Source: Trichoplax adhaerens (taxonomy: Eukaryota; Animalia; Placozoa). Taken from it: a DNA stretch of 13,853 nucleotides. This document shows, piece by piece, positions 1 through 13,853 of this stretch. Location of the stretch: contig NW_002061062.1 in the NCBI RefSeq assembly GCF_000150275.1, positions 1 through 13,853 of the forward strand. The letters are read 5' to 3'. The stretch's first letter is position 1. Every line of letters starts with the position of its first letter. Made by a program: the position numbers and the translations under genes. The notes beneath the pieces were generated by a model. The model ran no database searches. It saw nothing but the letters and a program-made list of their open reading frames with translations, and was not told the origin of the DNA.

Positions 1-864
1 AGGAATATGACTATGCGTATACCAAGGCATTAAATCAAGGTCATTGCTATCATAATTTAATATGAGGCATGTTTATTGGCCCTCCCAATGTGGGTAAATC
101 TTCTGTTAGAAAAGTATTTATTCAACAAGTATTAATCATTAATCAATCTCCTACACAAGTGGTTGAGAATTCTGATTTCATGGTGGAGACTGAATAGTAT
201 GGTATTCATAATTGAAAGAGTTGTGACTGGACTGAGGTAGTAGACGATAAAGTCAAAACAAGCATCGATAGTCAAGAGAATATCAATCAGTAAATTACCC
301 GTGTGCATCCAATACATCGACCCGTTTTAACAGATAACCTACCATTGCCAAATTTACAAAAAAGACAATGTGCAATCTCCTATAGTTGGTAATGCTACAA
401 AAGAAGTAGCCATACCATTGAAAGAGATTGAAATCAAATCAGCGTCTAAACTCGCCTTAACTCAATATTACTGTTCGTCTATCATCGATCAAAGAACCAA
501 TAAACGTAATAATAATCAATATGTTAAAATATGGAATTTCGGTGGTCATGCCATCTATCATGTTAATCATTCTCCATTGATCTCTGCTAATAGTATTTAT
601 ATTGTAGTCTTTAATATGAATCAAGACATTAATGACAAGGTATGAACAAGACAGAACGAATCACTGAACATGACTTATTTACAAGCTATGCAAGAATGGC
701 TTACGCCGACCATAGGTAGCCATAGAAGGCAAAGTACAATAAATGTAAACTTTAATAGCGAAGATGAACAGTATTCATTACTTATTATTATTTCTAGTAG
801 CTTCTTATAGCGATTGTATTACAAAACAAGAAGATTGAAAAACTCCATTTAATCAATTTGTATC
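1..864 (+). pseudogene. Decayed, 3'-truncated ROC (Roco GTPase) exon, paralogous to 12009-12750
   Basis: Frame 3 reads EYDYAYTKALNQGHCYHNLI*GMFIGPPNVGKSSVRK, a P-loop GxxxxGKS colinear with KYYNAYSKALKHGHCFNHLIRGMFIGPRNVGKTSVRK near 12023-12133. After a frameshift it reads YVKIWNFGGHAIYH..NSIYIVVFN..YLQAMQEWL. Lesions: in-frame stops at 63-65, 195-197, 213-215 and 643-645, frameshifts, and G3 Asp changed to Asn. Homology ends at about 864, before COR. Confidence 0.92.
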
Positions 865-868
865 GGGT

Positions 869-1899
869 CACATAGGGACCAATAGTTGTCAGTGTCGCAT
901 ATGGACTACTAAAGAGTAAAGCGCGACATAGCCACAGGCGTCAACTGGGATTTTTAGCCAAGCAAGCTTCATGGTTATCAATAGCGCCCTTCCTCATGCA
1001 GGACTTTTGCAAGGAGTACTTATAGGTATGAAATAACCAATGAATTAGTAGTCTGTAATCGCTGATAAGTGCGTGTATTTAGTGTATATGCACTTGGATA
1101 GAGCTGTTTAGCCGAGTAGAGTTTTATTTCACCTGTCCTCCTCTTTTATCCACTAGCTCCTGTTTGCAATAAGCAGTGCGCAGTCGGATTGATAGGATTA
1201 AATCTACATCACAGCAAAATCATCAAGTTGTTCTATTAGCCGATTTTTAAAACATCCATTGGTAAGTGACCTATTCCGTTTAGGTATCCATCATTATACA
1301 TTGTATTTCAAGTAAAAATAGAAATTATAGATAGGTAAACGACTCCAACGAAACTATATTACAAGCATCCTTTCTTATTTTGCACTATCATTGATGTGGC
1401 TAGCATTCATTTGCTGTTGTCTATCAGGATAAAACGATTGTTGTTTGACGGTTATTATGATTATGAGTATAATGTATTTGTAAGCTGGAGTGCATTTTAT
1501 TAATGTACACGTAAATTAGTCTACTCCTTGGATTTAGTTTGGTATTGATTGATGTCAGCACACGATTGTCCGATAGCGTTGTCTTCAGTAATTATCTACA
1601 GAGATTGATTGAATGATTTTCGGATAATCTTCCATGCGGAATTGATAGACGACATTGTAGAAGTTGATTTATTGATACTTGAAAATTGTGTATAATGGAA
1701 TAATTGATGTTGTTCTGTTGAACTACGACTAGCACGTAAGTACAACCATTCCGACATAACCTCATTAATACGCAGAGATAATATCGATCCGATGATTAGT
1801 CATTAATGGTTGCAACGAAGCTTGATTTCAATCTTATTTGTCTCTAACCTGTCGTTCAAGTCTTTAACTAACATACTATTGAATTGAGTGAAGGGAAAG
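869..1899 (+). repeat. Upstream (promoter/5'UTR) block of TPR gene copy A; segmental duplicate of 8951-9809
   Basis: Long colinear near-identity with 8951-9809 (e.g. cacatagggac, agcaagcttcatggtt, cacgattgtccgatagcgttgtcttcagtaattatctacagag), continuing into the coding region. Confidence 0.95.
1262..1893 (+). other. Putative 5'UTR intron of TPR gene copy A
   Basis: Consensus donor G|GTAAGT at 1262, branch-point-like ACTAAC at 1867-1872, and AG at 1892-1893, 6 nt before ATG 1900. Copy B has ACTAAC at 9777-9782 and CAG at 9801-9803; its donor position falls in the N gap. Confidence 0.5.
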
Positions 1900-2331
1900 A
1901 TGGCTGATGATGAATCTGTCTGTTCTACGAGTATGCTTCCTCACCATACCCGTATACAATCACTGTACGAAAAGGGTAACTCATTCAAGACTGCCTTCCA
2001 GTTGGTGGACGGACTATCTTGTTATACACAAGCTGTCGATGAGATTGCTTCGTTGTCGAATCCTAGTGCGGATATTGATCGACTTGCATGCGATATTTAT
2101 CTTGGTCTTTGTGATATTTACACTTTACAATTTAAATTCATGAAAGCTGTTGAATGGAGTAAAAAGGGACAAACTGTGGCTACTAAACTGCAAGATGAAG
2201 TGAGCATGGCTCAATGCTTACTAAGAGAAAGCGAGATTAAGAGATACCAAGAGGATTACAACGGAGCACTGCAAGACGGTAAGAAATCGTTGGAAATGAA
2301 ATTAAAATGGTTAAACGAAAAGGATGCTCGT

Positions 2332-3308
2332 CTTGCCGATAGTTATCATCAAATTGGGCGACTCTACTGGGACTTGTGCAAGTACGATCAGGCTCTAGAT
2401 ATGCATAACAAGTCACTACAAATTGGATTGTCAGTTCTTGGTCACAATCATCCCCATGTTGCAAAGTCATATCACAACATAGGAGTTGTCTATCATGACC
2501 AAGGCAAGTACGATCAGGCTCTGGATATGTATGACAAGTCACTGCAAATTGGATTGTCAGTCCTAGGTCACAATCATCCCGATGTTGCGTGGTCATACAA
2601 TAACATAGGAGTTGTCTATAGAAGCTAAGGCAAGTACGATCAGGCTCTGGATATGTATTACAAGTCACTGCAAATTGGATTGTCCGTCCTTGGTCACAAT
2701 CATCCCGATGCTGCGCGGTCATATGGTAGCATAGGAGTTGTCTATTTTGACTTGGGCAAGTACGATCTGGCTCTGAATATGTATGACAAGTCACTGCAAA
2801 TTGGATTGTCAGTCCTTGGTCACAATCATCCCCATGTTGCGAAGTCATATCACAACATAGGACTTGTCTATCATCGCCAAGGCAAGTACGATCAGGCTCT
2901 GGATATGTATGAGAAGTCAATTGGATTGTCAGTCCTTGGTCACAATCATCCCGATGTTGCGCGGTCATATAACAGCATAGGAGTTGTCTATCGTCACCAA
3001 GGCAAGTACGATCAGGCTGTGGATATGTATGGCAAGTCACTGCAAATTCGATTGCAAGTCCATGGCCACAATCATCCCGATGTTGCGTGGCCATATAACA
3101 ACATAGGAGTTGTCTATCATCACCAAGGCAAGTACGATCAGGCTGCGGATATGTATGACAAGTCACTGCAAATTCGATTGTCAGTCCTTGGTCATAATCA
3201 TCCCCATGTTGCCAACTCATATAACAACATAGGAGCTGTCTAAGTGTCTATCATCACCAAGGCAAGTACGATCAGGCTATGGATAACTTTAACAAGTCAC
3301 TCGATATC
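2332..3308 (+). repeat. Coding tandem array, 8 x 126-bp TPR units (copy A)
   Basis: Units start at 2332, 2458, 2584, 2710, 2836, 2956, 3082 and 3208. Consensus VAxSYxxIGxVYxxQGKYDQALDMYDKSLQIxLSVLGHNHPx. Confidence 0.97.
3236..3251. mobile_element. Probable hAT-type transposon excision footprint (CTGTCTAA GTGTCTAT)
   Basis: Relative to the repeat consensus, the 8-mer CTGTCTAT is duplicated and the two inner bases are replaced by their complements (T>A, C>G). The 8-mer fits the nTnnnnAn target preference of hobo/Hermes-type hAT elements. Confidence 0.65.
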
Positions 3309-3861
3309 GCAACCTTAAGCGGAAATGATCGCCTAGTTACAAGGACCAAAAAGAATATCGAAATCACTCTCCAGAAGCAGAAATCGTCGACATCAATAGA
3401 TGTCTATGAGCACCAAGGCAAGTACGATCAGGCTGTGAATATGCATGAGGATTATAAATAAATGTGCATGTTTTCATTGTAATGATTTTATAGTGTGTCA
3501 CTAAAAAAAAAAAAATATTTGATAAGATGATATCTTATGGAGTAATTTATATCGCTTAATTTATTTTGTTAAGTGAAGGGATGTTATGTATGTAAGAATA
3601 CAGTAACCTGTTGTACTGCACCTAACGTGTTAGCATAAGTTAAGGTATAATACATTATCACGGCTATACTATTTAAATGCAGTAAATCCTAAATAAAAGA
3701 GACTTTTAGTAAGCTTACTAGGAGGAGTGTATCAAAGTCTCTCGTGCTTACGTTAACGACTAAGAGTGGAAACACAACGGATAACAGCTGCTTTAATATA
3801 AGAAAAGTGAATGGCTGAACATGTTGTTGTTATTAATGTTCTTCTATTACTTTTGAGCCAG

Positions 3862-3933
3862 ATAACAATCTTAGATCAGGAAAAAGAAAAAAGAATCCAG
3901 CGAAATGTCATTTATTTCCAGGAATGCATCCAG
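3862..3933 (+). CDS. Tentative 72-nt phase1-phase1 exon (xNNLRSGKRKKNPAKCHLFPGMHP) upstream of the ZU5 exon
   Basis: Pyrimidine-rich tract plus CAG at 3859-3861, donor CAG|GTTAAT at 3934, and phase compatible with the acceptor at 4182. No recognisable motif. Confidence 0.3.
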
Positions 3934-4182
3934 GTTAATTTTGTTTTGATTGGAGATAGGAGTGCAGTTTTCGACAGTATCTTTCTATCCACAACCTTTT
4001 CTCTCTAAATTGTAGTCCCATTATGTAATGACAGAGCTATTCTATTTATTAGTGCATTAAAATCGAAGAGTACTGTTAACTAGAAAAAACGCAGGCATAG
4101 GAGAACATTTCTTGTCATTGACAGTACTATCTAAATCATCAATTTCATTTCTATTCTTATATAACGTCAACTATCGCAACAG

Positions 4183-5138
4183 CCAAAGCTGGCTATCCAA
4201 AGGTATCGAATAACTGTCAAGTTAATCAAGATCATGATTTAACCTTGCCTGAAGTACCTGGATTAAAATTTCATCTTCCAGCTCAGTGTATAACAACCGA
4301 AGCCGCCCTAACCATGACTGTATACTATGCAGATCCACCTTATAATCAAGGTTTACCAATTCCGAAAGATGCTGATGGTAAACACTTTATCCAGTTATCG
4401 CCAATCGTTTGCCTCGAGCCTGATGGGTATCAATTTACCCCTAATAGCACAAGGAAAGCTTTACTTCAAGTCCCCGTTCCATATATCAACCAGATAGTTA
4501 CACTTAAGAAAAATAACAACTTTAATACCCCAATAAAAATCATTTGTCGAAGCTATGGAGGTGTGAAGTGGGAACAGCAAGATGTAGAGTATGAATATAG
4601 CCGCGATAAAAATGGATATTATTGCCTTACTTTTGCAGTAAGCCATTTCTCTGACTATGTCGTCTATTCCTACGTCAAATCTACCATTTATTCAATCCGC
4701 AAGTATATCTTTCCATCTCACCAGCAACAAATTAAAACGTTAGCTTTCCTATCCGAAATAGACACAAGTGATGATACCGTCCATATGAAATTAATCTTAT
4801 CTAAAAAAGATGAAGATGAAACTGCTATCGTGTCAGCATTCGATCAGACATTTATTAGGATACGTTTAGCTACGACTGGACTTGAAAATACTATTCTAGA
4901 TAATGGTCTATACTTCGCTATATTTGAGAAACGAGGTTTAGATTATCCTGAAGGTTATTTAAAGCCAAAGAAAGTTACTATCAATTAGAATGAGTTTAGC
5001 TATCATGCTATCCATTACTTTTGCAAGGTTATCGATAAAGCAGCTATTGATATAGCTCAAATCTTTCTACAGCCTCAAGACCAGAAGCAAGACACCAATG
5101 AAAAGGCTTGCTACTTGAGGAGAGTAAATTCCAACGAG
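4183..5138 (+). pseudogene. Exon encoding a ZU5 domain plus UPA-like region, with one in-frame TAG
   Basis: ZU5 hallmarks: PGLKFHLPAQC, LSPIVCLEPDGYQF (4395-4436), LLQVP, and FAVSHFS (HFS at 4644-4652). The frame continues past TAG 4986-4988 (NEFSYHAIHYFCKV...NSNE) to a phase-0 donor GAG|GTAAAT at 5139. The candidate acceptor CAG at 4180-4182 is less certain. Confidence 0.75.
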
Positions 5139-5228
5139 GTAAATGAACAATATCTATAATCAACCTTGAAGTTGTGAAGTATATAGACTCTGTTTAATTT
5201 ACTAAGTAAAGTTTGTCATGTTTGGCAG

Positions 5229-5304
5229 CCCAACCCATCAAAGCGGTCTGATCCAGAAAAGCTGCCTGTTCTACCCACTAAAGATCATTCAGCATTACCA
5301 GATG
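5229..5304 (+). CDS. Linker exon (PNPSKRSDPEKLPVLPTKDHSALPD) of the ZU5-death domain gene
   Basis: Acceptor tttggcag at 5228 (intron 5139-5228, 90 nt) and donor G|GTAATT at 5305. Phases 0 and 1 join both neighbouring exons in frame. Confidence 0.75.
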
Positions 5305-5384
5305 GTAATTTTGCAATAGCGTAAACAATAGTTGATTATTATCAAGAATTATGTGATGTAATACTTTCAGCTACGTTTGTCACT

Positions 5385-5666
5385 GATGATATGATCGCAT
5401 ACAGTTTTACTAGATGATGATATCACCAACGAATTTTTTAAGATCGTCATTAGAATATTTAGCTACTAGTAAGCTACTTTTAAGCTTTTTTTTTACGTTT
5501 ATTATTCATAATTATAGTAATTAATTTGCCCATTTAATCATAATAGTGACCAGAAGTGATTATTATGTATGATATTATCGCACAAAGTTCTGTTAGCTAA
5601 TTAGAATACCAACGAATATTTCAGATTATAATTAGAACATATAAACTACTACTCCACTACTTTACT
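5385..5666. repeat. Degenerate ~185-bp-period duplication within intron 5305-5852
   Basis: tgatatgatcgcatacagttt...caccaacgaattttttaagatcgtcattagaata...ctactttt (about 5385-5480) recurs as tgatattatcgcacaaagttc...taccaacgaatatttcagattataattagaaca...ctacttta (about 5570-5665). Confidence 0.6.
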
Positions 5667-5852
5667 TGCGAGTATCCAACAATAAGTAAAATGAATTAGG
5701 TTAAATTAAAACAAATGTATCCACATTTAAATTATTGAGTCATATTGATGTACACAGCTGGGTATGCGGGTTCGGCTAGTCCATGATAAGATAATTTCAA
5801 TTTGTAATTTTAAGATGACGTATGTGGTAATATATTCATTCGTGCCTTATAG

Positions 5853-6109
5853 ATCCTGGAAACTATTTTCACTCGATCGCTAGTTGTGTTGGTGTAGACT
5901 GGATAAAATTAGCAACAGTCCTAGATCCAACGATTGATACTGAGGTTATCGAAGCAAAACATCGTGGCCATACCTATAACAGTGCTATCCAATTGCTTCA
6001 TCAGTGGTACAGAAGGAAATACCCAGAAGCTACCCTTATTCTATTGCGAAACGCTTTGGAAACGATTAACAGAAATGATATTATTATCCCAAACGAACAA
6101 AATTCCTAG
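5853..6109 (+). CDS. Terminal exon encoding a death domain
   Basis: After acceptor ccttatag (5852) it reads DPGNYFHSIASCVGVDWIKLATVLDPTIDTEVIEAKHRGHTYNSAIQLLHQWYRRKYPEATLILLRNALETINRNDIIIPNEQNS* (TAG 6107-6109). This matches the DD pattern WxxLAxxL...LLxxW...ATxxxLxxALxxIxRxDI. Not in the ORF track. Confidence 0.88.
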
Positions 6110-6195
6110 AGGACTAATCTTCTTTCGTCTACTATAGTGTAGATTCTAATTTATTGATGGTCTATTTGTGCTTATTTGCATTTTTTCAAGATCAA

Positions 6196-6201
6196 AATAA
6201 A
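6196..6201 (+). terminator. Candidate polyadenylation signal of the death-domain exon
   Basis: AATAAA 87 nt after the stop, with a second at 6243-6248. The hexamer is common in AT-rich DNA. Confidence 0.35.
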
Positions 6202-8017
6202 TAGCATTATAAGAAAATAATGTTTTATTTCGCCTTGGTTGAAATAAACCAACAATTTAATGGATAATATTAGCAATGCTCAATGTTATCGATTTCAATT
6301 TTTCAGCTTCGCCATCACAATCACGTTTTGTGTAAGAATCTGCTGATGTAAAAATTAAGTTTTTAACATTTTATTCCTGTGCACAACGAAATTGCAACAT
6401 TATAAGCATCATAAATTTACTTTAAATACTTATGGAGCACTTACAAATTGCTGGTGAAGGATAAAACATTTGTAATTGTAAAGCATTCTAAAGCGTTTGT
6501 TAATTACGGTTTCTATTCATTTTTGCTTGTACTAATCGTGAGTTAAACTTGTTAATGCTATACTATTTTATGCAAAGTGACGTTGTTTCAGACGGTAAAA
6601 TTAACCTACTTTATGATAAGTTATAAAGATCCTGACAATAAAGAAATCGTTTGCTATAATGAATTGTAAGAAGAGCTAGTTAATTGCCAGTTATCGACTG
6701 TGAATAGCTTCTAGTCATGATTGCTACGAAGTACGAAATTAAGACGAAATTGCTTTACTGTATTTGATCTTTCCATCTCGCTCCAGGCTTGTCCTGCCAA
6801 TTTGTACGACATTTCATCAAGACAGTATGAGCTAAAACGAGCAAAAGACTCTTGAATAATTTGAGTCAATGGAAGATCAAATGAATAAAACCAAGTAGAG
6901 TCCGTCTATGGTTCGTTTAAAATTGCACCATCGGTACCTTTCCTGTAATCGTCGAGCGCCACTGCTCATGGAGCGGGTACAATCTTTGTGGCTATTACCC
7001 AAGTTTGACAAGCTACTCTAGTACTCCTCATGGAGAAATTGATTAGTCTTGTACAGTAAACGGACTGTTTATAAGCTAGAATACATTAGTGTACTGCATC
7101 AAATCGCAGTTTCGATAGCATATCAGCTTCCACGAGAATGCTCCTGTCTTGATTATTTTAGACGAGTTAGTACTTGGTACAAGATGGTAGTACTGTACAG
7201 CTAGTGCACCTGTAAAATGTCATCACCTGTTTTAACCAGAGTTGAGCAAGTTACCCTGATGTTAACAGTTAACCGCTCAATATTGGTTTTGAACTTATTG
7301 CATTGGTATCAACTTCATGTAGAAACAGTTTAGGAAGCTTTAAGAAGTAGTTTACTTAAAATTACATAGTACAGCGTGGAGACTGTCCAAGATTGGTATA
7401 TTATTTTGACTAGGAATAATTTGTGAGCATGCACGTATAGCATAGACTTGGTAATTCTCCTCCATGTAGTTGATGAAAGTACCAACCATGTCCATTTTAG
7501 CTCTATCGTCTGAAGCCAACATTAGCGTGCCTTGGGCATCAATGTTAAAGTAGCGTAAATTAGTGCATACGAGAAATAAGCGTAGATGATTCTTTTAATG
7601 TTGCATCTTTTAGCCTCCTTGAATTAGTATAAAGATTGTTCTTCCGATGGCAGAAATTACTGTTGGCCACTGTTTTATTGGTGATCATCATCGACGATGA
7701 GTCCAATAACTAAGCCATCTTGCTGAATCGCTTGATATCATCTTCATCGTGCGCTACTGTATTCCGTTGATTTTTTACTGTCATTTGTCAAACAGTTTAT
7801 AAAAGTATACTAAAAATTTTCTTTAAATGGTGTATATTAACAACTCATTGATTGTTAATTATTGAATAAAATTAAGGTAGTAATCATATGGAATTGCTAT
7901 GGATTGCAGTACTTCCAGTATGTATGAAGGGTTACATCTTGTATCGATAGCATGCAATTTGCAATCAGGCCAAACAGTACTCACGCCAACCCTGTCAGGA
8001 GATTTTAATTTGATCTT

Positions 8018-8067
8018 NNNNNNNNNNNNNNNNNNNNNNNNNNNNNNNNNNNNNNNNNNNNNNNNNN
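8018..8067. other. Assembly gap (50 N)
   Basis: Run of N. Confidence 0.99.
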
Positions 8068-8950
8068 TATCCAATGTTGTAATCCGTTGTTGATGTATCT
8101 GGTTAGTCTAAAAAATTCATGATTGCGATTGTACAATCTTTATTAGTATGGCTTACAATTTGACCATGCAAATGTCTATCATTAATTCATCATCGGACTA
8201 CGAACGTTGTATACAAAATGATAATATTTGTTACAAGCAATATCTTTTATTAAATTTATGGCATTCTTTGTTGAGCTACAGTAGATTCAATGGATCGGAT
8301 AATGTCAATGATGTATATTGAAATAGACTGCTATCATTTCTCTATGTCTCTACAGTATGTTATATAATATTCATCGCTATTCTTTCTTGCAGTTTACTAT
8401 CAGAAACCTATCCTGAACAGTCGCTCCTTTAAGTTATTACTTGATGAATTTCATAGTTGATAATTTGAGAGTTTTATATGGCAGTAACAAGCTCATTATC
8501 AAATTGAATTGCAATGAGCACAGACTGCGGAGCCACGACAATAAATAGCGTACGGTAGACTGCAATCAAATTGTTGATAAAATGATAGCTTTATTGATAG
8601 ACTGTAATAGAAGAAAATGGATAAGGATAATATGTCAACTATCCTTACTTAGAGAGAACGATATTTTGTTGGTAACTTGTATCTACCCATGCAATAGTTC
8701 ATTGGCATCAAACTTTAGCAAATAATATGATTGACGGCTTACTAAGCTAACAAGACATAAGAAATTCGGTAGGGAAGATACTCGTAGGTTAATCTTAAAC
8801 TCGTATTTAATAAACTAATACAAATTAGAGCTGTTCTAATTTCATAAGGTCTTATGACTATGCACAAATCATTGCAAAGAAACCTAATTTATTTATTTAC
8901 CTTACCTTCATTTTATTTATTTACCTTTATCCGTCGGCTATCGCATCATC

Positions 8951-9809
8951 CACATAGGGACTACTTACGAATAAAAGCGTGTCATAGCCGCAGGTTTAAC
9001 TGGGATTTCTAGCAAGCAAGCTTCATGGTTACCAATAGTGCCCTTCCTCGTGCAGGACTTTGCAAGGAGTTTTTATAGTTAGGAAATAACCAATGAGTTA
9101 GTAGTCTGTAATCGCTGATACACTGTAGTATTTAGATGTGCTGATCAGTGCGTGTATTTAGTGTATATGCAGTTGGATAGAGCTGTTTAGCCGAGTAGAG
9201 TTTTATGTCACCTGTCGTTCTCTTTTTATCCATTAGCTCCTGTTGCAATAAGCAGCGCGCAGTCGGATTGGTAGGATTAAATCTACGTAACAGCAAAATC
9301 ATCAAGTTGTTATTAGCCGATTNNNNNNNNNNNNNNNNNNNNNNNNNNNNNNNNNNNNNNNNNNNNNNNNNNTCTATTAGAATAAAAAGATTGTTGTTTG
9401 ATGGTTATTATGATTATGAGTATAATCTATTTGTAAGCTGGAGTGCATTTTGTTAATGTACACGTAAGCACACGATTGTCCGATAGCGTTGTCTTCAGTA
9501 ATTATCTACAGAGATTGATTGAATGATTTTCGGATAATCTTCCATGCGGAATAGATAGGCAATATTGTAGAAGTTGATTTATTGATGCTTGAAAATTGTG
9601 TATAATGGAATAATTGATGTTGTTCTGTTGAACTACGACTGGCACGCAAGTACAACTATTCCGACATAACCTCATTAATACGCAGAGATAATATCGATCC
9701 GATGATTAGCAATTAATGGTTGCAACGAAGCTTGATTTGAATCTTATTTGTCTCTAACCTGTCGTTCAAGTCTTTAACTAACATATTTTTGAATTGAGTG
9801 CAGGAAAAG
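8951..9809 (+). repeat. Upstream (promoter/5'UTR) block of TPR-Roco gene copy B; duplicate of 869-1899
   Basis: Colinear with 869-1899. Shared CCAAT (1037-1041 / 9090-9094) and ACTAAC plus AG before the ATG. Confidence 0.95.
9323..9372. other. Assembly gap (50 N)
   Basis: Run of N; its flanks correspond to 1245 and 1420 of copy A. Confidence 0.99.
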
Positions 9810-11928
9810 ATGGCTGATGATGAATCTGTCTGTTCTACGAGTGTGCTTCCTCACCATACCCGTATACAATCACTGTACGAAAAGGGCATCTCATGCAAGA
9901 CTGCCTTCCAGTTGGTGGACGGACTATCTTGTTATACACAAGCTGTCGATGCGATTGCTTCGTTGTCGAATCCTAGTGCGGATATTGATCGACTTGCATG
10001 TGATATTTATCTTGGTCTTTGTGACATTTACACTTTACAATATCAATTCAAGGAAGCTGTTGAATGGAGTGATAAGGGACAAACTGTGGCTACTAAACTG
10101 CAAGATGAAGTGAGCATGGCTCAATGTTTACAAAGAGAAAGCGAGATTAAGAGACGCCAAGGGGATTTCAACGGAGCACTGGAAGACGGTAAGAAATCGT
10201 TGGAAATGAAATTAAAATGGTTAGACGAAAAGGATGCTCGTCTTGCCGATAGTTATCATCAAATTGGGTGCGTCTACTGGGACTTGTGCAAGTACGAACA
10301 GGCTGTGGATATGCATAACAAGTCACTGCAAATTGGATTGTCAGTTCTTGGTCACAATCATCCCCATGTTGCGAAGTCATATAACAACATAGGAATTGTC
10401 TATCATGACCAAGCCAAGATCGATCAGGCTATGGATATGTATGATAAGTCGCTGCAAATTGGATTGTCAGTCCTAGGTCATAATCATCCCGATGTTGCGT
10501 GGTCATACAATAACATAGGAGTTGTCTATGATCGCTTGTGCAAGTACGATCAGGCTGTGGATATGTATGACAAGTCGCTGCAAATTCGATTGGCAGTTCT
10601 TGGTCACAATCATCCTGATGTTGCCAATTCATATAACAACATAGGAGTTATCTATCGTCACCAAGGCAAGTACGATCAGGCTGTGGATATGTTGCACAAG
10701 TCACTGCAAATTGGATTGGCAGTCCTTGGTCACAATCATCCCCATGTTGCCAACTCATATTACAACATAGGACTTGTTTATCATGACCAAGGCAAGTACG
10801 ATCAGGCTGTGGATATGTATGACAAGTCACTACAAATTGGATTGTCAGTCCTTGGTCACAATCATCCTGATGTTGTGAAGTCATATAAAAACATAGGCAA
10901 TGTCTATAAAAGCCAACGCAAGTACGATCAGGCTGTGGATATGTATGACAAATCACTGCAAATTGGATTGGCAGTCCATGGTCACAATCATCCTGATGTT
11001 GCCAGCTCATATAACAAAATAGGCAATGTCTATAAAAGCCAAGGCAAGTACGATCAGGCTGTGGATATGTATGACAAATCACTGCAAATTGGATTGGCTG
11101 TCCTTGGTCATAATCATCCTGATGTTGCCAACTCATATAACAACATAGGACTTGTCTATGATGACCAAGGCAAGTACGATCAGGCTGTGGATATTTATGA
11201 CAAATCTCTGCAAATTCGATTGTCAGTTCTTGGTCACAATCATCCTGATGTTGCCAACTCATATAACAACATAGGCAATGTCTATAAAAGCCAAGGCAAG
11301 TACGATCAGGCTGTGGATATGTATCACAAGTCACTGCAAATTGGATTGGCTGTCCTTGGTTATAATCATCCTGATGTTGCCAACTCATATAACGACATAG
11401 GAGTTGTCTATCGTCACCATGGCAAGTACGATCAGGCTGTGGATATGTATGACAAATCACTGCAAATTCGATTGTCAGTCCTTGGTCATAATCATCCTGA
11501 TGTTGCCAACTCATATAACAACATAGGCAATGTCTATAAAAGCCAAGGCAAGTACGATCAGGCTGTGGATATGTATGACAAATCACTGCAAATTCGATTG
11601 TCAGTCCTTGGTCACAATCATCCCCACGTTGCGAAGTCATATAACAACATAGGACTTGTCTATCGTCGCCAAGGCAAGTACGATCAGGCTGTGGATAACT
11701 TTAAGAAGTCACTGTATATCGCAACCTTAAGCGGAAATGATCGCCTAGTTAAATGGACCAAAAAGAATATCGATATCACTCTCCGGAAGCCGAAATCGTC
11801 GACATCAACAGCGAGAAATTGGATCAAAAGTACCGTTGAACGGTTTCAACCGAATCAAATCAACAACGTTACAGCGCCAGCAAATACTATTGACGGCAGT
11901 CATAACAATCAACACGTACAAGAGAAAG
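9810..11928 (+). CDS. TPR-ROC-COR (Roco family) protein, coding exon 1: N-terminal degenerate TPRs, 12 x 42-aa TPR units, capping helix and linker
   Basis: Open frame from ATG 9810 (706 codons) ending at donor AAG|GTAATT 11929. The ORF track's tail (11929-12053) is intron read-through. Confidence 0.93.
10242..11720 (+). repeat. Coding tandem array, 12 x 126-bp TPR units (copy B)
   Basis: Exact 126-bp period from 10242 to the last unit starting at 11628. Consensus VAxSYxxIGxVYxxQGKYDQAVDMYDKSLQIxLxVLGHNHPx. Confidence 0.98.
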
Positions 11929-12008
11929 GTAATTGGAGTTTTAATACAGTAGTAGACGAGAGAGCGATGGATAACCGTAACCCTATTCTGTATTTTGTTG
12001 TTCTACAG
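11929..12008 (+). other. 80-nt phase-1 GT-AG intron joining the TPR exon to the ROC-COR exon
   Basis: GTAATT...tattttgttgttctacAG; splicing gives in-frame ...HVQEK-A-LQEKKYYNAY... Confidence 0.88.
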
Positions 12009-13853
12009 CTTTGCAAGAAAAGAAATATTACAATGCATATAGCAAAGCATTAAAACATGGTCATTGCTTTAATCATTTAATACGAGGCATGTTCATTGGT
12101 CCTCGCAATGTGGGCAAAACTTCTGTTCGAAAAATATTTACCAAGCAACCACTAGACAATCCATCTCCGACACAAGTGGCTGAGAATTTGGATATTATGG
12201 TAGAGACCGAATATTATAATATTCGTAACTTAGAGGGTTGTGATTGGACTGAAATACTAGACGATAAAGTCAAGACAGTCATACAACAGTTAGCCCAAAC
12301 AAGTATCAATAGTCAAGATAACATCAGTCAGCAAGTAACCGACATAGATCCAATAGAAAATCAAAATGCAGACAAAGACGAAAACAATCAGTATGTTAAA
12401 ATATGGGATTTCGCAGGTCATGCCGTCTATCATCTTACTCATTATCCCTTTATCTCCGTCAATAGTATTTATATTTTAGTATTTAATATTAATCAAGACA
12501 TTAACGACAAGGTAACAACAAGGAACAACCAATTACTCAAAACGACGTATTTACAAGCTATGCAAGAATGGCTTACATCAATCATAGCTGGCCATAGAAG
12601 CCAAAGTACCATCAATGTCAACATTAAAAGTGAAGATGAACAGCATTTACCACCTTCACAGCATTCATTACCTATTATTATTTTAGTAGCTTCTCATGGC
12701 GATTGTATTATCAATGAAGAAAATGGACGTACTCGATTCAATCAATTTGTGTCTACATTGACGTCTCGCATGCCTTCTTATGCCAATCATATCTATTCTT
12801 CTGGTATTATTTTTAATTGCAATCCTCTTGATAGTACTCCGTCGACACTAGAGCAGCGTCGACAATGTTGTCTTCGTTTACATGGTATCATTAAGGCATT
12901 TGTACAATCGCTGCCATTTATTACGAATCCTATACCTATTCGATGGTATATCATGGCTAGAATATTAAATAAATCGCTCCCTACTAACAGTAACAATCAA
13001 CCCGCATCTTCTATTATCAATCAAATTAGACATTCTCAAGTGCATAATATTATGACAATGCAACAAATAGTAAACTTGTCTCAACAATACGGATTATATG
13101 AAAACCATGATGAATTAATCGCTATGCTAATGTATCTACACGATTTAGGAGAAGTCATCTACTGTGATAAAGTAGGCGACGACGGAATTATTATAACTAA
13201 TGTCGATTGGTTATTAAATATATTTCGTTCTATTATTCAATTACAAGATTTTGTACAAGGAGGTGCACAGATAAAACGTGACTATGAGATAGCAAGCCAA
13301 AGAGGAAAATTATCAAGATCATACATTGATCATGCTATTTATAAATTTAATTTAGATGACAATAGTAAGCAAACTATATTGGCACTCATGCATGCTTATG
13401 ATATTCTATGTTCAATTACAAATGAGAAGAACGACAACGGCGAAGAATGTCAATACTTTGTTCCATATTTGTTACGATATGATGTTAAGCCATTTGATTT
13501 ATCAAAATATCATCAATCAGATTGGCTCTACATCGGATACGAGCATACAGATATTCCATATCTTCCAGATGGAATTTATTATTGCTTGTTATCTTCATGT
13601 TTAAAGGAATGGAATAATACGGACGTAGAATTATACTATCAATGTGCCAAATATTATTTAGCAAATGACAATCATTATCTTGTAGTCAAGAAAGAGGAAT
13701 CTCATATTGGTTTACAATATTGCTATCAGAAAATAAATGAGCCCGAGAGGAGTCAATCGATTATCGATAAAGTTACAAATTCTATATTTGTCAAACGGCC
13801 AGACGAAATTGTCAAGAATAAACTCATCTCTACTGTCAATGATAGGATGGTAA
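12009..13853 (+). CDS. TPR-ROC-COR protein, coding exon 2: ROC GTPase plus COR domain (open to window end)
   Basis: 614 stop-free codons from 12011. ROC motifs: G1 GPRNVGKT (12098-12121), G2 SPTQV, G3 WDFAGH (12404-12421), SIYILVFN, QEWLTSI, G4 ILVASHGD (about 12680-12703). COR motifs: IPIRW (12932), LHDLGEVIY (13136), DWLLNIFRSII, YFVPYLL (13454), LPDGIY (13562). Possible donor ATG|GTAA at 13850. Confidence 0.93.

What the first reader, a model, noticed from the sequence alone, without database searches (positions are those of the whole stretch)
1..13853. Cluster may encode a full TPR-ROC-COR-ZU5-UPA-death domain sensor-switch-effector receptor
Seen: the same-strand order is [ROC remnant][upstream block-TPR ... 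ZU5-UPA-like-DD][upstream block-TPR-ROC-COR ...]. The ZU5-DD exons have no obvious start of their own and lie directly behind TPR copy A, exactly where ROC-COR is missing. Inference: the ancestral unit was TPR-ROC-COR-(more exons)-ZU5-UPA-DD, and copy A lost the middle. That would combine a Roco switch with a PIDD/UNC5/ankyrin-like C-terminal death-signalling module, an architecture I do not recognise as characterised.
Basis: inference. Interest (0 to 1): 0.85.

Follow-up and report, generated by a model that had tools for sequence, protein, structure and literature searches.

The report
Decayed chimeric TPR–ZU5–death-domain gene, Trichoplax
This small Trichoplax adhaerens scaffold holds one intact TPR-Roc-COR receptor-like gene and, in front of it, a still-transcribed but broken patchwork gene in which a copied TPR array, PIDD-like ZU5-UPA exons and a death-domain exon taken from a Roco gene were joined by exon shuffling; it is not the remnant of one giant TPR-Roc-COR-ZU5-UPA-death receptor.

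Summary
The window is all of T. adhaerens scaffold C1295. On the + strand it holds a broken ROC fragment (1-864), TPR array A (1900-3417), ZU5-UPA-like exons (3862-3933, 4183-5138, 5229-5304), a death-domain exon (5853-6109), then intact TPR-ROC-COR copy B (9810-13853, cut by the scaffold end). RNA-run contigs confirm every predicted exon border. One contig also joins the TPR-A tail to exon 3862 through a GC..AG intron, in frame.

The 'ancestral TPR-ROC-COR-ZU5-UPA-DD' reading is not supported. Thirteen paralogous loci and Trichoplax sp. H2 gene models (1246-1304 aa) show TPR-Roc-COR-Death with no room for ZU5-UPA. ZU5-UPA-DD is a separate PIDD-like family; TRIADDRAFT_54879 has its own 5' end and TRIADDRAFT_54880 is TPR-ZU5-UPA.

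The copy-A unit is a three-part mosaic, with breakpoints at 3399/3506 and 5353/5354. It carries three lesions: TAA 2626, +8 nt near 3236, and TAG 4986. The TAG is present in spliced RNA.

Both assembly gaps are intergenic, and their flanks are collinear in paralogous loci.

TPR-Roco-DD genes in Trichoplax are already published (Civiero 2014). This scan has reported the same two families on other pieces of this genome. A Roco-DD-ZU5-UPA-DD gene at C1404/C1098 remains possible but untested.

The parts
1..864 (+). Broken ROC fragment (pseudogene piece): P-loop piece 66-194 in one frame, Roc core 331-642 in another, stop at 643-645. No COR follows. It is cut by the scaffold start.
   Evidence: blastn 70-78% to paralogous ROC exons over about 900 nt, ending at 864; Pfam Roc 21 bits and MMR_HSR1 P-loop; tblastn 84% to C1404.
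898..1899 (+). Upstream block of copy A, duplicate of the block in front of copy B (about 8953-9809).
   Evidence: Direct repeats 94-96%; 87-91% to upstream regions of copy-B-type genes in C1375, C1381, C1404 and C1239.
1900..3417 (+). TPR array A (KLC/NPHP3-type TPR_12 units of 126 nt) and its tail. Lesions: TAA at 2626-2628 where the repeat consensus has CAA, and an 8-nt insertion near 3236-3243 that shifts the frame. Homology to Roco-type genes ends at 3399. 3400-3417 is part of an extra TPR-unit fragment that supplies the splice donor.
   Evidence: Pfam TPR_12; repeats; lesions read from the sequence against copy B; homology end.
3418..3861 (+). GC..AG intron (donor AAG|GCAAGT) joining the TPR-A tail to exon 2. 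It contains the left breakpoint (homology to the ZU5 gene family starts at 3506) and a high-copy repeat at 3582-3783.
   Evidence: Joint 3415>3860, movable by 2, in one contig of RNA run X9 with 0 mismatches over 3310-3415; sequence; blastn.
3862..3933 (+). Exon 2, 72 nt, phase 1-1 linker exon (DNNLRSGKRKKNPAKCHLFPGMHP). It has an in-frame ATG at 3924-3926 that is conserved in paralogs.
   Evidence: Joints 3415>3860 and 3930>4180; the same frame is used in TRIADDRAFT_54879 and TrispH2_011975; splice sites.
4183..5138 (+). Exon 3: ZU5 domain (about 4185-4680), HFS motif at 4644-4652, then a UPA-like beta domain. There is a premature TAG at 4986-4988 where four paralogs have TGG.
   Evidence: Joints; profile vs PDB ankyrin-2 E 1.3e-13; AF2 pLDDT 90; Foldseek 4d8o E 8e-8; ZU5 Z 13.4; TAG vs TGG; a spliced RNA contig covering 4785-5136 with 0 differences carries the TAG.
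5229..5304 (+). Exon 4, 76 nt linker exon (phase 0 to 1).
   Evidence: Joints 5136>5227 and 5303>5852, GT..AG; splice sites.
5305..5852 (+). Last intron. The right breakpoint is at 5353/5354: ZU5-family homology gives way to the last intron of Roco genes.
   Evidence: blastn: C976, C1098 and C1414 homology ends at 5353-5392. From 5354 the match is 92-95% to introns behind ROC-COR exons in C1375, C1381 and C1404.
5853..6109 (+). Death-domain exon (phase 1, with stop codon), of the type that ends TPR-ROC-COR genes at C1404:947172 and C1381:440832 (about 90% aa).
   Evidence: Pfam Death 27.1 bits; paralogs; RNA joint 5303>5852.
8018..8067 (.). Assembly gap 1, intergenic. About 280 nt are hidden, judged from two collinear paralogous loci.
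   Evidence: C1381 718>998; C1375 19518>19798.
9323..9372 (.). Assembly gap 2, in the upstream block of copy B. About 175 nt are hidden, judged from C1375, C1381, C1404 and copy A.
9810..11928 (+). Copy B exon 1: N-terminal region plus 12 TPR_12 units, open frame.
   Evidence: ORF 9798-12050; Pfam; the donor at 11929 matches H2 models ...QEK|ALQEKKYYNAY.
11929..12008 (+). Copy B intron, 80 nt, GT..AG, phase 1.
   Evidence: Sequence and H2 gene models P0052 and P0064.
12009..13853 (+). Copy B exon 2: Roc GTPase and COR-A, open to the scaffold end. By paralogy about 160 aa (Cys-rich COR tail and a DD exon) lie beyond the scaffold.
   Evidence: Pfam Roc 43.1 and COR-A 43.4 bits; 83% to H2 P0052, which goes on to Death at 1159-1238; C1375 paralog (95% in the COR part) has a DD 1086 nt downstream.

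Best explanation
**What the scaffold is.** It is a piece of a tandem, fast-rearranging array of Trichoplax adhaerens TPR-Roc-COR-Death genes.

**Copy B.** Copy B is an intact member. A TPR array is spliced through an 80-nt phase-1 intron to Roc-COR. Its last exons, including the death domain, lie beyond the scaffold end.

**The unit in front of copy B.** It is a chimera made by recombination in introns (exon shuffling). Its three parts are:
1. a duplicated upstream block plus TPR array from a copy-B-type Roco gene (898-3399);
2. exons 2-4 of a PIDD-like ZU5-UPA-DD gene (3506-5353);
3. the last intron and death-domain exon of another Roco gene (5354 onward).

Every intron at the joins is phase 1, so the frames fit. 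When new, the chimera would have encoded TPR-ZU5(HFS)-UPA-DD.

**Its present state.** It is decayed: a nonsense codon and an 8-nt insertion in the TPR array, and a TGG>TAG nonsense codon in the UPA-like part. It is still transcribed and spliced. At most it can give a truncated ZU5 protein, starting from ATG 3279 or 3924 and ending at TAG 4986, without a death domain.

**How intact relatives probably work (inferred).**
- TPR-Roc-COR-DD: the TPR array binds a ligand, the Roc-COR GTPase acts as the switch, and the DD recruits DD partners.
- ZU5-UPA-DD proteins: these probably act like PIDD, with autoproteolysis at HFS and then assembly through the DD.
For: **Shown.**
- Domain content.
- Exon joints and the GC..AG link from the TPR-A tail to exon 2. 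Sequence and phases.
- Mosaic homology blocks and breakpoints at 3399/3506 and 5353/5354. C1098 shows the same switch from ZU5 gene to Roco intron plus DD.
- Lesions: TAA 2626, +8 nt, and TAG 4986 against TGG in four paralogs. The TAG sits inside a spliced RNA contig.
- Family architecture TPR-Roc-COR-A-Death: H2 models P0051 and P0052. The DD lies 430-1500 nt behind ROC-COR at 13 loci.
- Independent ZU5-UPA-DD gene TRIADDRAFT_54879 in a gap-free locus, with no TPR or ROC within 16 kb upstream.
- TPR-ZU5-UPA gene TRIADDRAFT_54880/RDD40932.
- ZU5 bodies 85-96% alike carry three unrelated DD exon types.
- Copy B intron matches H2 models.

**Inferred.** The order of the events, the former coding capacity of the chimera, and all statements about function.
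Against: - The TPR-A tail to exon 2 joint rests on one contig in one RNA run (X9). Another run (X4) shows exon 2 joined to a different upstream exon, but that exon maps to paralogs C976 and C1098.
- The two TPR lesions (TAA 2626 and +8 nt) were not checked against independent reads, because the laid stretch began at 3230.
- No listed contig is shown bridging 5353/5354. Support for that join comes from the RNA splice 5303>5852, from C1098, and from the H2 ortholog TrispH2_011919, which has the same ZU5 and the same DD.
- The UPA assignment is weaker than the ZU5 one. Multi-domain alignments have rmsd 11-18, and the domain is truncated in the window.
Confidence: 0.75

Rival explanations
1. One reading: the ancestral repeat unit was one gene, TPR-ROC-COR-(exons)-ZU5-UPA-DD. 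Copy A is that gene after deletion of ROC-COR, and copy B would continue into ZU5-UPA-DD beyond the scaffold end.
For: - TPR A is followed on the same strand by ZU5-UPA-DD exons and is spliced to them.
- At C1098/C1404 and at C1414:12602k a ZU5-like ORF lies 1.4-3.3 kb behind a ROC-COR exon on the same strand.
- JGI model TRIADDRAFT_62714 joins a COR tail, a DD and ZU5-UPA.
- The phases allow that path.
Against: - Copy B's closest full-length relatives end in a DD about 160 aa after the point where the scaffold stops: H2 P0052 (83% over ROC-COR, 1246 aa) and the C1375 paralog (95% in the COR part). Neither has ZU5.
- Homology of copy A to Roco genes stops at 3399. It resumes at 5354 inside the Roco last intron. 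The 1.85 kb between is 92-96% identical to a different gene family.
- TRIADDRAFT_54879 has its own 5' coding region.
- The H2 model P0054 of the Roco gene upstream of C1098 ends in a DD and a stop.
Confidence: 0.08
2. The chimera is a working TPR-ZU5-UPA-DD gene. The stops and the frameshift are errors of the 2008 draft assembly or are bypassed.
For: - It is transcribed and correctly spliced.
- All joins are in phase.
- An intact TPR-ZU5-UPA gene exists elsewhere (TRIADDRAFT_54880).
- The DD exon is intact.
Against: - TAG 4986 is present with 0 differences in spliced contigs of two runs (X4 and X9).
- Both public gene models (T. adhaerens and sp. H2) had to splice around that spot.
- Four paralogs have TGG there.
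- With the TAG, the DD cannot be translated together with ZU5.
Confidence: 0.07
3. Assembly artefact: scaffold C1295 is a false join of reads from several paralogs, so the order TPR A, ZU5, DD does not exist in the genome.
For: - It is a small unplaced scaffold with two gaps in a family of 85-98% identical repeats.
- 5354-13853 is 90-98% collinear with C1375.
- C1098 duplicates part of C1404 at 99.9%.
Against: - Independent contigs bridge 3399/3400 (X9, 3310-3415) and 3506 (X1 and X2, 3448-3571) without mismatch.
- RNA joints link 3417>3862 and 5304>5853.
- The H2 ortholog has the same ZU5 with the same DD.
- C1098 has the same right-hand switch.
Confidence: 0.05

Closest known systems
Trichoplax adhaerens ROCO gene set (Civiero et al. 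2014, PMC4104024) and Trichoplax sp. H2 models named 'Nephrocystin-3' or 'Kinesin light chain' (e.g. RDD45494.1)
   Same: Copy B and the donors of TPR A and of the DD exon belong to this set: TPR repeats, Roc, COR-A, and a C-terminal Death domain.
   Different: The published survey lists domain content only. It does not describe ZU5-UPA partners, DD exon swapping or this chimera.
DAPK1 (human ROCO protein: kinase-ankyrin-ROC-COR-death domain)
   Same: A ROC-COR GTPase is followed by a C-terminal death domain. This is established knowledge of the ROCO family and is named in PMC4104024.
   Different: The placozoan genes have no kinase, CaM-binding region or ankyrin repeats. An N-terminal TPR array takes their place.
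PIDD1 (LRR-ZU5-ZU5-UPA-DD)
   Same: - Distant sequence homologs of the window's ZU5 ORF are LRR-ZU5-Death proteins.
- The HFS motif sits at the ZU5/UPA border.
- A DD lies at the C-terminus, and the paralog's DD matches the PIDD DD (2of5_H) with Z 11.6.
   Different: - There is one ZU5, not two.
- There is no LRR. Upstream is a TPR array, a disordered region or another DD.
- Pfam ZU5 does not score on the window's copy.
- Cleavage is untested.
Ankyrin and UNC5 ZU5-UPA-DD supramodule
   Same: Best structural and profile matches: 4d8o and 6m3q (E 1e-13; Z 13.4-13.7) and UNC5b 3g5b.
   Different: Ankyrin and UNC5 ZU5 domains are not autoproteolytic. Sequence identity is only 12-18%, and the domain orientation differs (rmsd above 10 for the multi-domain fit).
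FIIND of NLRP1 and CARD8 (ZU5-UPA followed by CARD)
   Same: A ZU5-UPA pair stands in front of a death-fold domain. The intact paralog aligns over 226-236 residues to 7crw_A and 7jn7_B (Z about 9). A sensor-repeat array lies upstream in the TPR-ZU5-UPA relatives.
   Different: The output domain is a DD, not a CARD. The sensor is a TPR array, not NACHT-LRR. Nothing is known about function.

Membership tests
ROCO (Roc-COR) proteins - copy B | Roc GTPase domain with P-loop | tested here: met
   Pfam Roc 43.1 bits (cut-off 27) in 11981-13852. The P-loop GPRNVGKT and the DFAGH motif are read in the translation.
ROCO (Roc-COR) proteins - copy B | COR domain directly behind Roc | tested here: met
   Pfam COR-A 43.4 bits (cut-off 35.3), residues 345-498 of the ORF. 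COR-B and the tail lie beyond the scaffold end and cannot be read.
ROCO (Roc-COR) proteins - copy A unit | Roc-COR between TPR A and the DD exon | tested here: not met
   There is no Roc or COR match between 3461 and 5853 by Pfam or by tblastn with paralogs. That stretch is 92-96% identical to ZU5-family genes.
ZU5 domain (PF00791) | Sequence match to the family model | tested here: inconclusive
   Pfam gives no hit on 4122-4985 even at E 1. However, homolog P0005 scores 26 bits (cut-off 21), more distant homologs score 41-57 bits, and the family profile hits ankyrin ZU5-UPA at E 1.3e-13.
ZU5 domain (PF00791) | ZU5 beta-sandwich fold | tested here: met
   AF2 model pLDDT 90. Residues 1-165 align to ankyrin ZU5 3f59 with Z 13.4, rmsd 2.9, 138 aligned, and to UNC5b ZU5 with Z 9.4.
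UPA domain / ZU5-UPA-DD supramodule | Second beta domain behind ZU5 with the UPA fold, then a DD | tested here: inconclusive
   - The intact paralog P0002 has a confident beta domain at 517-646 and a DD at 677-766.
- ZU5 plus the second domain align to AnkB, UNC5b, CARD8 and NLRP1 over 226-317 residues, but with rmsd 12-18.
- The second domain matches a chain of the rat NLRP1 FIIND crystal structure (7crv_B) with Z 7.6, rmsd 3.4.
- In the window the domain is cut by TAG 4986.
Death domain (PF00531) | Match above Pfam's gathering score; six-helix fold | tested here: met
   Window 5831-6106 scores 27.1 bits against a cut-off of 22.6. The paralog's DD aligns to the FADD DD with Z 13.8, rmsd 2.4.
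PIDD-like autoprocessing ZU5 | HFS motif at the end of ZU5, and self-cleavage | not testable with these tools
   The HFS motif is present at 4644-4652 (model residues 154-156). It reads HFS in 28 of 46 aligned homologs. Cleavage itself needs an experiment.
PIDD1 orthologs | LRR, two ZU5 domains, UPA, DD | tested here: not met
   There is no LRR and only one ZU5 in the window or in close paralogs. LRR-ZU5-Death proteins are only distant hits (E 1e-14 to 1e-4).

The most novel reading that the evidence does not exclude
In placozoans, Roc-COR and ZU5(HFS)-UPA may be interchangeable middle cassettes between the same kind of TPR sensor array and death-domain output, exchanged by phase-1 exon shuffling. 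On this reading:
- intact TPR-ZU5-UPA(-DD) genes would be PIDD/FIIND-like autoproteolytic sensors with a TPR ligand-binding arm;
- at C1404/C1098 a single gene may even run TPR-Roc-COR-DD-ZU5-UPA-DD, as JGI model TRIADDRAFT_62714 suggests.

The window's chimera would be a dead snapshot of such an exchange.
Probability: 0.25. Interest if true: 0.6.

Novelty: new variant of a known kind. Interest (0 to 1): 0.38.

Why it matters
**Ordinary side.** A claimed new super-receptor turns out to be two gene families that are already annotated, plus a decayed chimera. The TPR-Roc-COR-Death family is published, and the scan has met both families on other scaffolds.

**Useful side.**
- It is a clean, breakpoint-resolved and RNA-supported case of domain shuffling in an early-branching animal.
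- A TPR codon run (CAC CAA G|GC AAG T) serves as a GC-AG splice donor.
- All the modules are bounded by phase-1 introns.
- Nearly identical ZU5-UPA bodies carry three unrelated death-domain exons.

Together these show how death-fold signalling genes in placozoans diversify. They also point to an almost undescribed TPR-ZU5-UPA family that resembles PIDD and the NLRP1/CARD8 FIIND module and is worth testing for autoproteolysis.

Tried and rejected
1. **Pfam on the ZU5 ORF (4122-4985) and the small exons.** No hit. The domain had to be shown by profile and fold.
2. **P0013 (TrispH2_009717, 1876 aa; TPR at 185-312, ZU5-like at 1441-1684) as a possible TPR-ROC-COR-ZU5 protein.** Rejected. It shows no similarity to the window's ROC-COR by BLASTP and has no Roc or COR in Pfam at E up to 1. 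The middle looks low-complexity.
3. **Locus C1414:12602k (TPR-like, ROC-COR 32%, a middle ORF, ZU5-like 23%).** Its ORFs give no Pfam hits, and no gene model was found among the fetched proteins. Whether it is one gene or two is unresolved.
4. **Public gene models TRIADDRAFT_62553 and TrispH2_011919.** They start at ATG 3811 and splice around the TAG. Both conflict with the RNA joints: the intron is 3934-4182, and there is no intron at 4986.
5. **The alternative 5' sequence seen in run X4 before 3860.** It is absent from the window. It maps to a 69-nt internal exon of paralogs C976, C1098, C991, C1383, C1414 and C1198, so it is not evidence about this locus.
7. **Kamm et al. 2019 (PMC6321704).** It does not treat Roco or ZU5 genes.
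8. Exons were searched by reference, and intact public paralogs were used for the whole-protein fold. No complex-prediction job was run.

Full report
**Source and layout**

The window is the whole of scaffold C1295 (13,853 nt) of a 105.6-Mb, 1414-contig assembly. The organism is Trichoplax adhaerens. The public protein TRIADDRAFT_62553 (P0049, 'Death domain-containing protein') is recorded on a 13,853-nt contig and matches the window's exons.

**Checking the observation**

All the parts are there, on the + strand.
- 1-864 is a ROC fragment, 70-78% identical to ROC exons of paralogs. It has a P-loop piece (66-194) and a Roc core (331-642, 21 bits, below Pfam's cut-off) in different frames, a stop at 643-645, and no COR.
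- 898-3399 duplicates the upstream block and TPR array of copy-B-type genes at 87-91%.
- Copy B has an open TPR ORF (9798-12050) and an ORF with Roc (43.1 bits) and COR-A (43.4 bits) that runs off the scaffold.
- Copy B's 80-nt GT..AG intron (11929-12008, phase 1) reproduces the junction ...QEK|ALQEKKYYNAY of Trichoplax sp. H2 gene models.
- 5831-6106 is a death domain (Pfam 27.1 bits, cut-off 22.6).

Pfam does not see ZU5 in 4122-4985. A whole-library HMMER search found 48 homologs. The distant ones are LRR-ZU5-Death proteins, that is, PIDD-like. A profile of the family hits the ankyrin-B ZU5-ZU5-UPA-DD tandem at E 1.3e-13. The AF2 model of the exon (pLDDT 90) matches 4d8o by Foldseek at E 8e-8 and ankyrin ZU5 at Z 13.4, rmsd 2.9 over 138 residues.

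The domain behind ZU5 is UPA-like, but less surely so. In the intact paralog TRIADDRAFT_54879, ZU5 plus the second beta domain align to AnkB, UNC5b, CARD8 and NLRP1 FIIND over 226-317 residues with high rmsd. The paralog's DD matches the FADD DD at Z 13.8. An HFS motif sits at the ZU5 end (4644-4652) and reads HFS in 28 of 46 homologs.

**Assembly gaps**

Both gaps lie between the DD exon and copy B, in non-coding DNA.
- The flanks of gap 8018-8067 are collinear in C1381 and C1375, with about 280 nt between them.
- The flanks of gap 9323-9372 are collinear in C1375, C1381, C1404 and in copy A itself, with about 175 nt between them.

No reading frame crosses either gap.

**Transcripts**

Contigs of four runs were laid on 3230-6600. 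Two runs (X1, X2) cover the introns as well and look like DNA. X4 and X9 behave like RNA, and X9 is RNA by its record.

| Joint | Intron or feature | Splice ends |
|---|---|---|
| 3930>4180 | 3934-4182 | GT..AG |
| 5136>5227 | 5139-5228 | GT..AG |
| 5303>5852 | 5305-5852 | GT..AG |
| 3415>3860 (one X9 contig) | 3418-3861 after a shift of 2 | GC..AG, donor AAG\|GCAAGT |

The X9 contig has no mismatch over 3310-3415, and the shift of 2 is allowed by the letters shared at both sides.

The phases fit. The TPR-tail frame ends in phase 1 at 3417. Exon 2 (72 nt) is phase 1-1. Exon 3 starts in phase 1 in the ZU5 frame. Exon 4 ends in phase 1, and the DD exon starts in phase 1.

The frame of exon 2 (DNNLRSGKRKKNPAKCHLFPGMHP) is the one used in TRIADDRAFT_54879 and TrispH2_011975. 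The public models for this locus start at ATG 3811, which is out of frame with the RNA-supported splicing. An in-frame ATG at 3924-3926 is conserved in paralogs, so the ZU5 part is not wholly without a start of its own.

**The unit is a mosaic**

blastn against 11 fetched paralogous regions gives the following.
- Roco-type homology runs from 898 to 3399.
- 3400-3505 is unique. It contains a TPR-unit fragment that supplies the GC donor.
- From 3506 to 5353 the sequence is 92-96% identical to the ZU5-family genes on C1098, C976, C1412, C1414 and C1404. In C976 and C1098 this homology begins inside the intron just after a 69-nt internal exon that the window lacks.
- From 5354 on, the sequence is 92-95% identical to the last intron, DD exon and 3' flank of Roco genes (C1375, C1404, C1381). 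5354-13853 is collinear with C1375.
- C1098 shows the same switch from ZU5 gene to Roco intron plus DD.

The DD exon is about 90% identical to the DDs that end TPR-ROC-COR genes at C1404:947172 and C1381:440832. It is only 44% identical to the DD of the closest intact ZU5 gene on C1412. It cannot be aligned to the DD behind the 96%-identical ZU5 copy on C1414. So ZU5 bodies that are 85-96% alike carry three unrelated DD exons.

**The unit is broken**
- TAA at 2626-2628 stands where the TPR consensus has CAA.
- Eight extra bases near 3236-3243 shift the frame between the array and its tail.
- TAG at 4986-4988 stands where four paralogs have TGG.

The TAG lies inside contigs of X4 and X9 that are spliced at 5138/5229 and have 0 differences. 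Both public models, and a third H2 model, splice around it. The two TPR lesions were not checked against reads.

Without the three lesions, the array, the tail, exon 2, ZU5-UPA and the DD would form one frame. This is an inference from the phases.

**What the family looks like**

Of 43 DD matches in the genome, 13 have a ROC-COR exon 430-1500 nt upstream on the same strand and 4 have a ZU5-like ORF. A ROC-COR hit lies within 5 kb upstream of only 2 of 24 ZU5-like hits.

H2 gene models give TPR (95-380), Roc (449-643), COR-A (811-961) and Death (1161-1235) in 1247 aa, and likewise in 1246 and 1304 aa. P0052 is 83% identical to copy B over ROC-COR and ends in a DD 163 aa after the point where the scaffold stops. 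No ZU5-UPA of about 300 aa fits.

On the other side:
- TRIADDRAFT_54879 (766 aa, gap-free locus on C1412) has a disordered 340-aa N-terminus, then ZU5-UPA, then a DD. No TPR or ROC lies within 16 kb upstream.
- Its neighbour TRIADDRAFT_54880 (H2: RDD40932) is TPR-ZU5-UPA.

Roc-COR-DD and ZU5-UPA-DD are two families that exchange exons.

**What stays open**

C1098:1-1976 is 99.9% identical to C1404 up to a scaffold gap. It carries, in order:
1. the Cys-rich tail of a ROC-COR exon;
2. two small exons;
3. an internal-type DD exon with a phase-1 GTATGT donor;
4. the 69-nt exon, exon 2, ZU5-UPA, and a Roco-type DD.

JGI model TRIADDRAFT_62714 joins the COR tail, the DD and ZU5-UPA in one gene. The H2 model of the same Roco gene (P0054, COR tail 100% identical over 64 aa) ends in another DD and a stop. 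The same DD exon type is used internally in an H2 TIR-DD protein (P0084).

A distant locus (C1414:12.60 Mb) has the same order: ROC-COR, a middle ORF, then a ZU5-like ORF. Its ORFs give no Pfam hits.

**Comparison with what is known**

Roc-COR with a C-terminal DD is the DAPK1 arrangement. Civiero et al. 2014 (PMC4104024) list at least 17 T. adhaerens ROCO genes with TPR, LRR, CARD and death domains. The ZU5-UPA-DD module is that of PIDD, ankyrin and UNC5, and ZU5-UPA plus a death-fold domain recalls the FIIND of NLRP1 and CARD8.

The variants here are a TPR array in front of a single HFS-bearing ZU5-UPA, and free exchange of the DD exon with Roco genes. Kamm et al. 2019 (PMC6321704) do not treat these genes.

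Earlier notes of this scan on other scaffolds of the same genome describe the same two families and similar exon swaps. I treated them as leads only. My own tests agree with them.

**Verdict**

The feature is a transcribed, decayed exon-shuffling chimera beside an ordinary member of a published family. Interest is moderate to low.

**Tool and procedure notes**

Exons were searched by reference, and intact public paralogs were used for whole-protein folding.

Noticed in passing
window 3582-3783: A high-copy repeat (MITE-like) lies inside intron 1 of the chimeric unit. Depth is 4000-9000 against 200-400 beside it, and contigs have loose ends at both edges in all four runs. Paralogs C1098 and C976 also carry it.
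   Followed up: partly
window 3236-3243: An 8-nt insertion (a local duplication of ...CTGTCTA...) shifts the frame of TPR array A just before its tail. Another first-stage note reads it as a hAT excision footprint. I only confirmed the extra 8 nt against copy B.
   Followed up: partly
window about 12340-12360 (copy B Roc): Copy B lacks, in frame, 56 aa that H2 models P0052 and P0064 have between the P-loop and the DxxG motif of Roc. This looks like a variable insert region of these Roc domains.
   Followed up: no
L018 (C1098) 1-1976 vs C1404:966510-968485: Small scaffold C1098 is 99.9% identical to C1404 up to a scaffold gap and probably fills that gap. JGI model TRIADDRAFT_62714 on C1098 fuses a COR tail, a DD and ZU5-UPA.
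   Followed up: partly
L018 2396-2465; L026 1830-1899 (also C991, C1383, C1414:12543141, C1198): A 69-nt phase 1-1 exon (AEPLQNLKKDDELSNSADREIQ) with a GC donor occurs at six loci. In run X4 it is spliced to exon 2 of ZU5-family paralogs. It has no ATG in frame, so those genes must start further upstream.
   Followed up: partly
C1412:7762703, C1414:13249282-13249560, window 5853-6109: ZU5-UPA gene bodies 85-96% alike end in three unrelated death-domain exon types. Two of these types also end Roco genes. This points to recurrent swapping of the terminal DD exon.
   Followed up: yes
P0084 (TrispH2_011687): This H2 protein has TIR plus the same internal-type death-domain exon as C976 and C1098, followed by a second DD-like stretch. 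It is another product of the same exon pool.
   Followed up: no
L030 (C1414:12602500-12612499, minus strand): A very divergent locus has the order TPR-like ORF, ROC-COR (32%), a 131-aa ORF, a ZU5-like ORF (23%) and a 67-aa ORF. None is recognised by Pfam. Whether it is one gene or several is unknown.
   Followed up: partly
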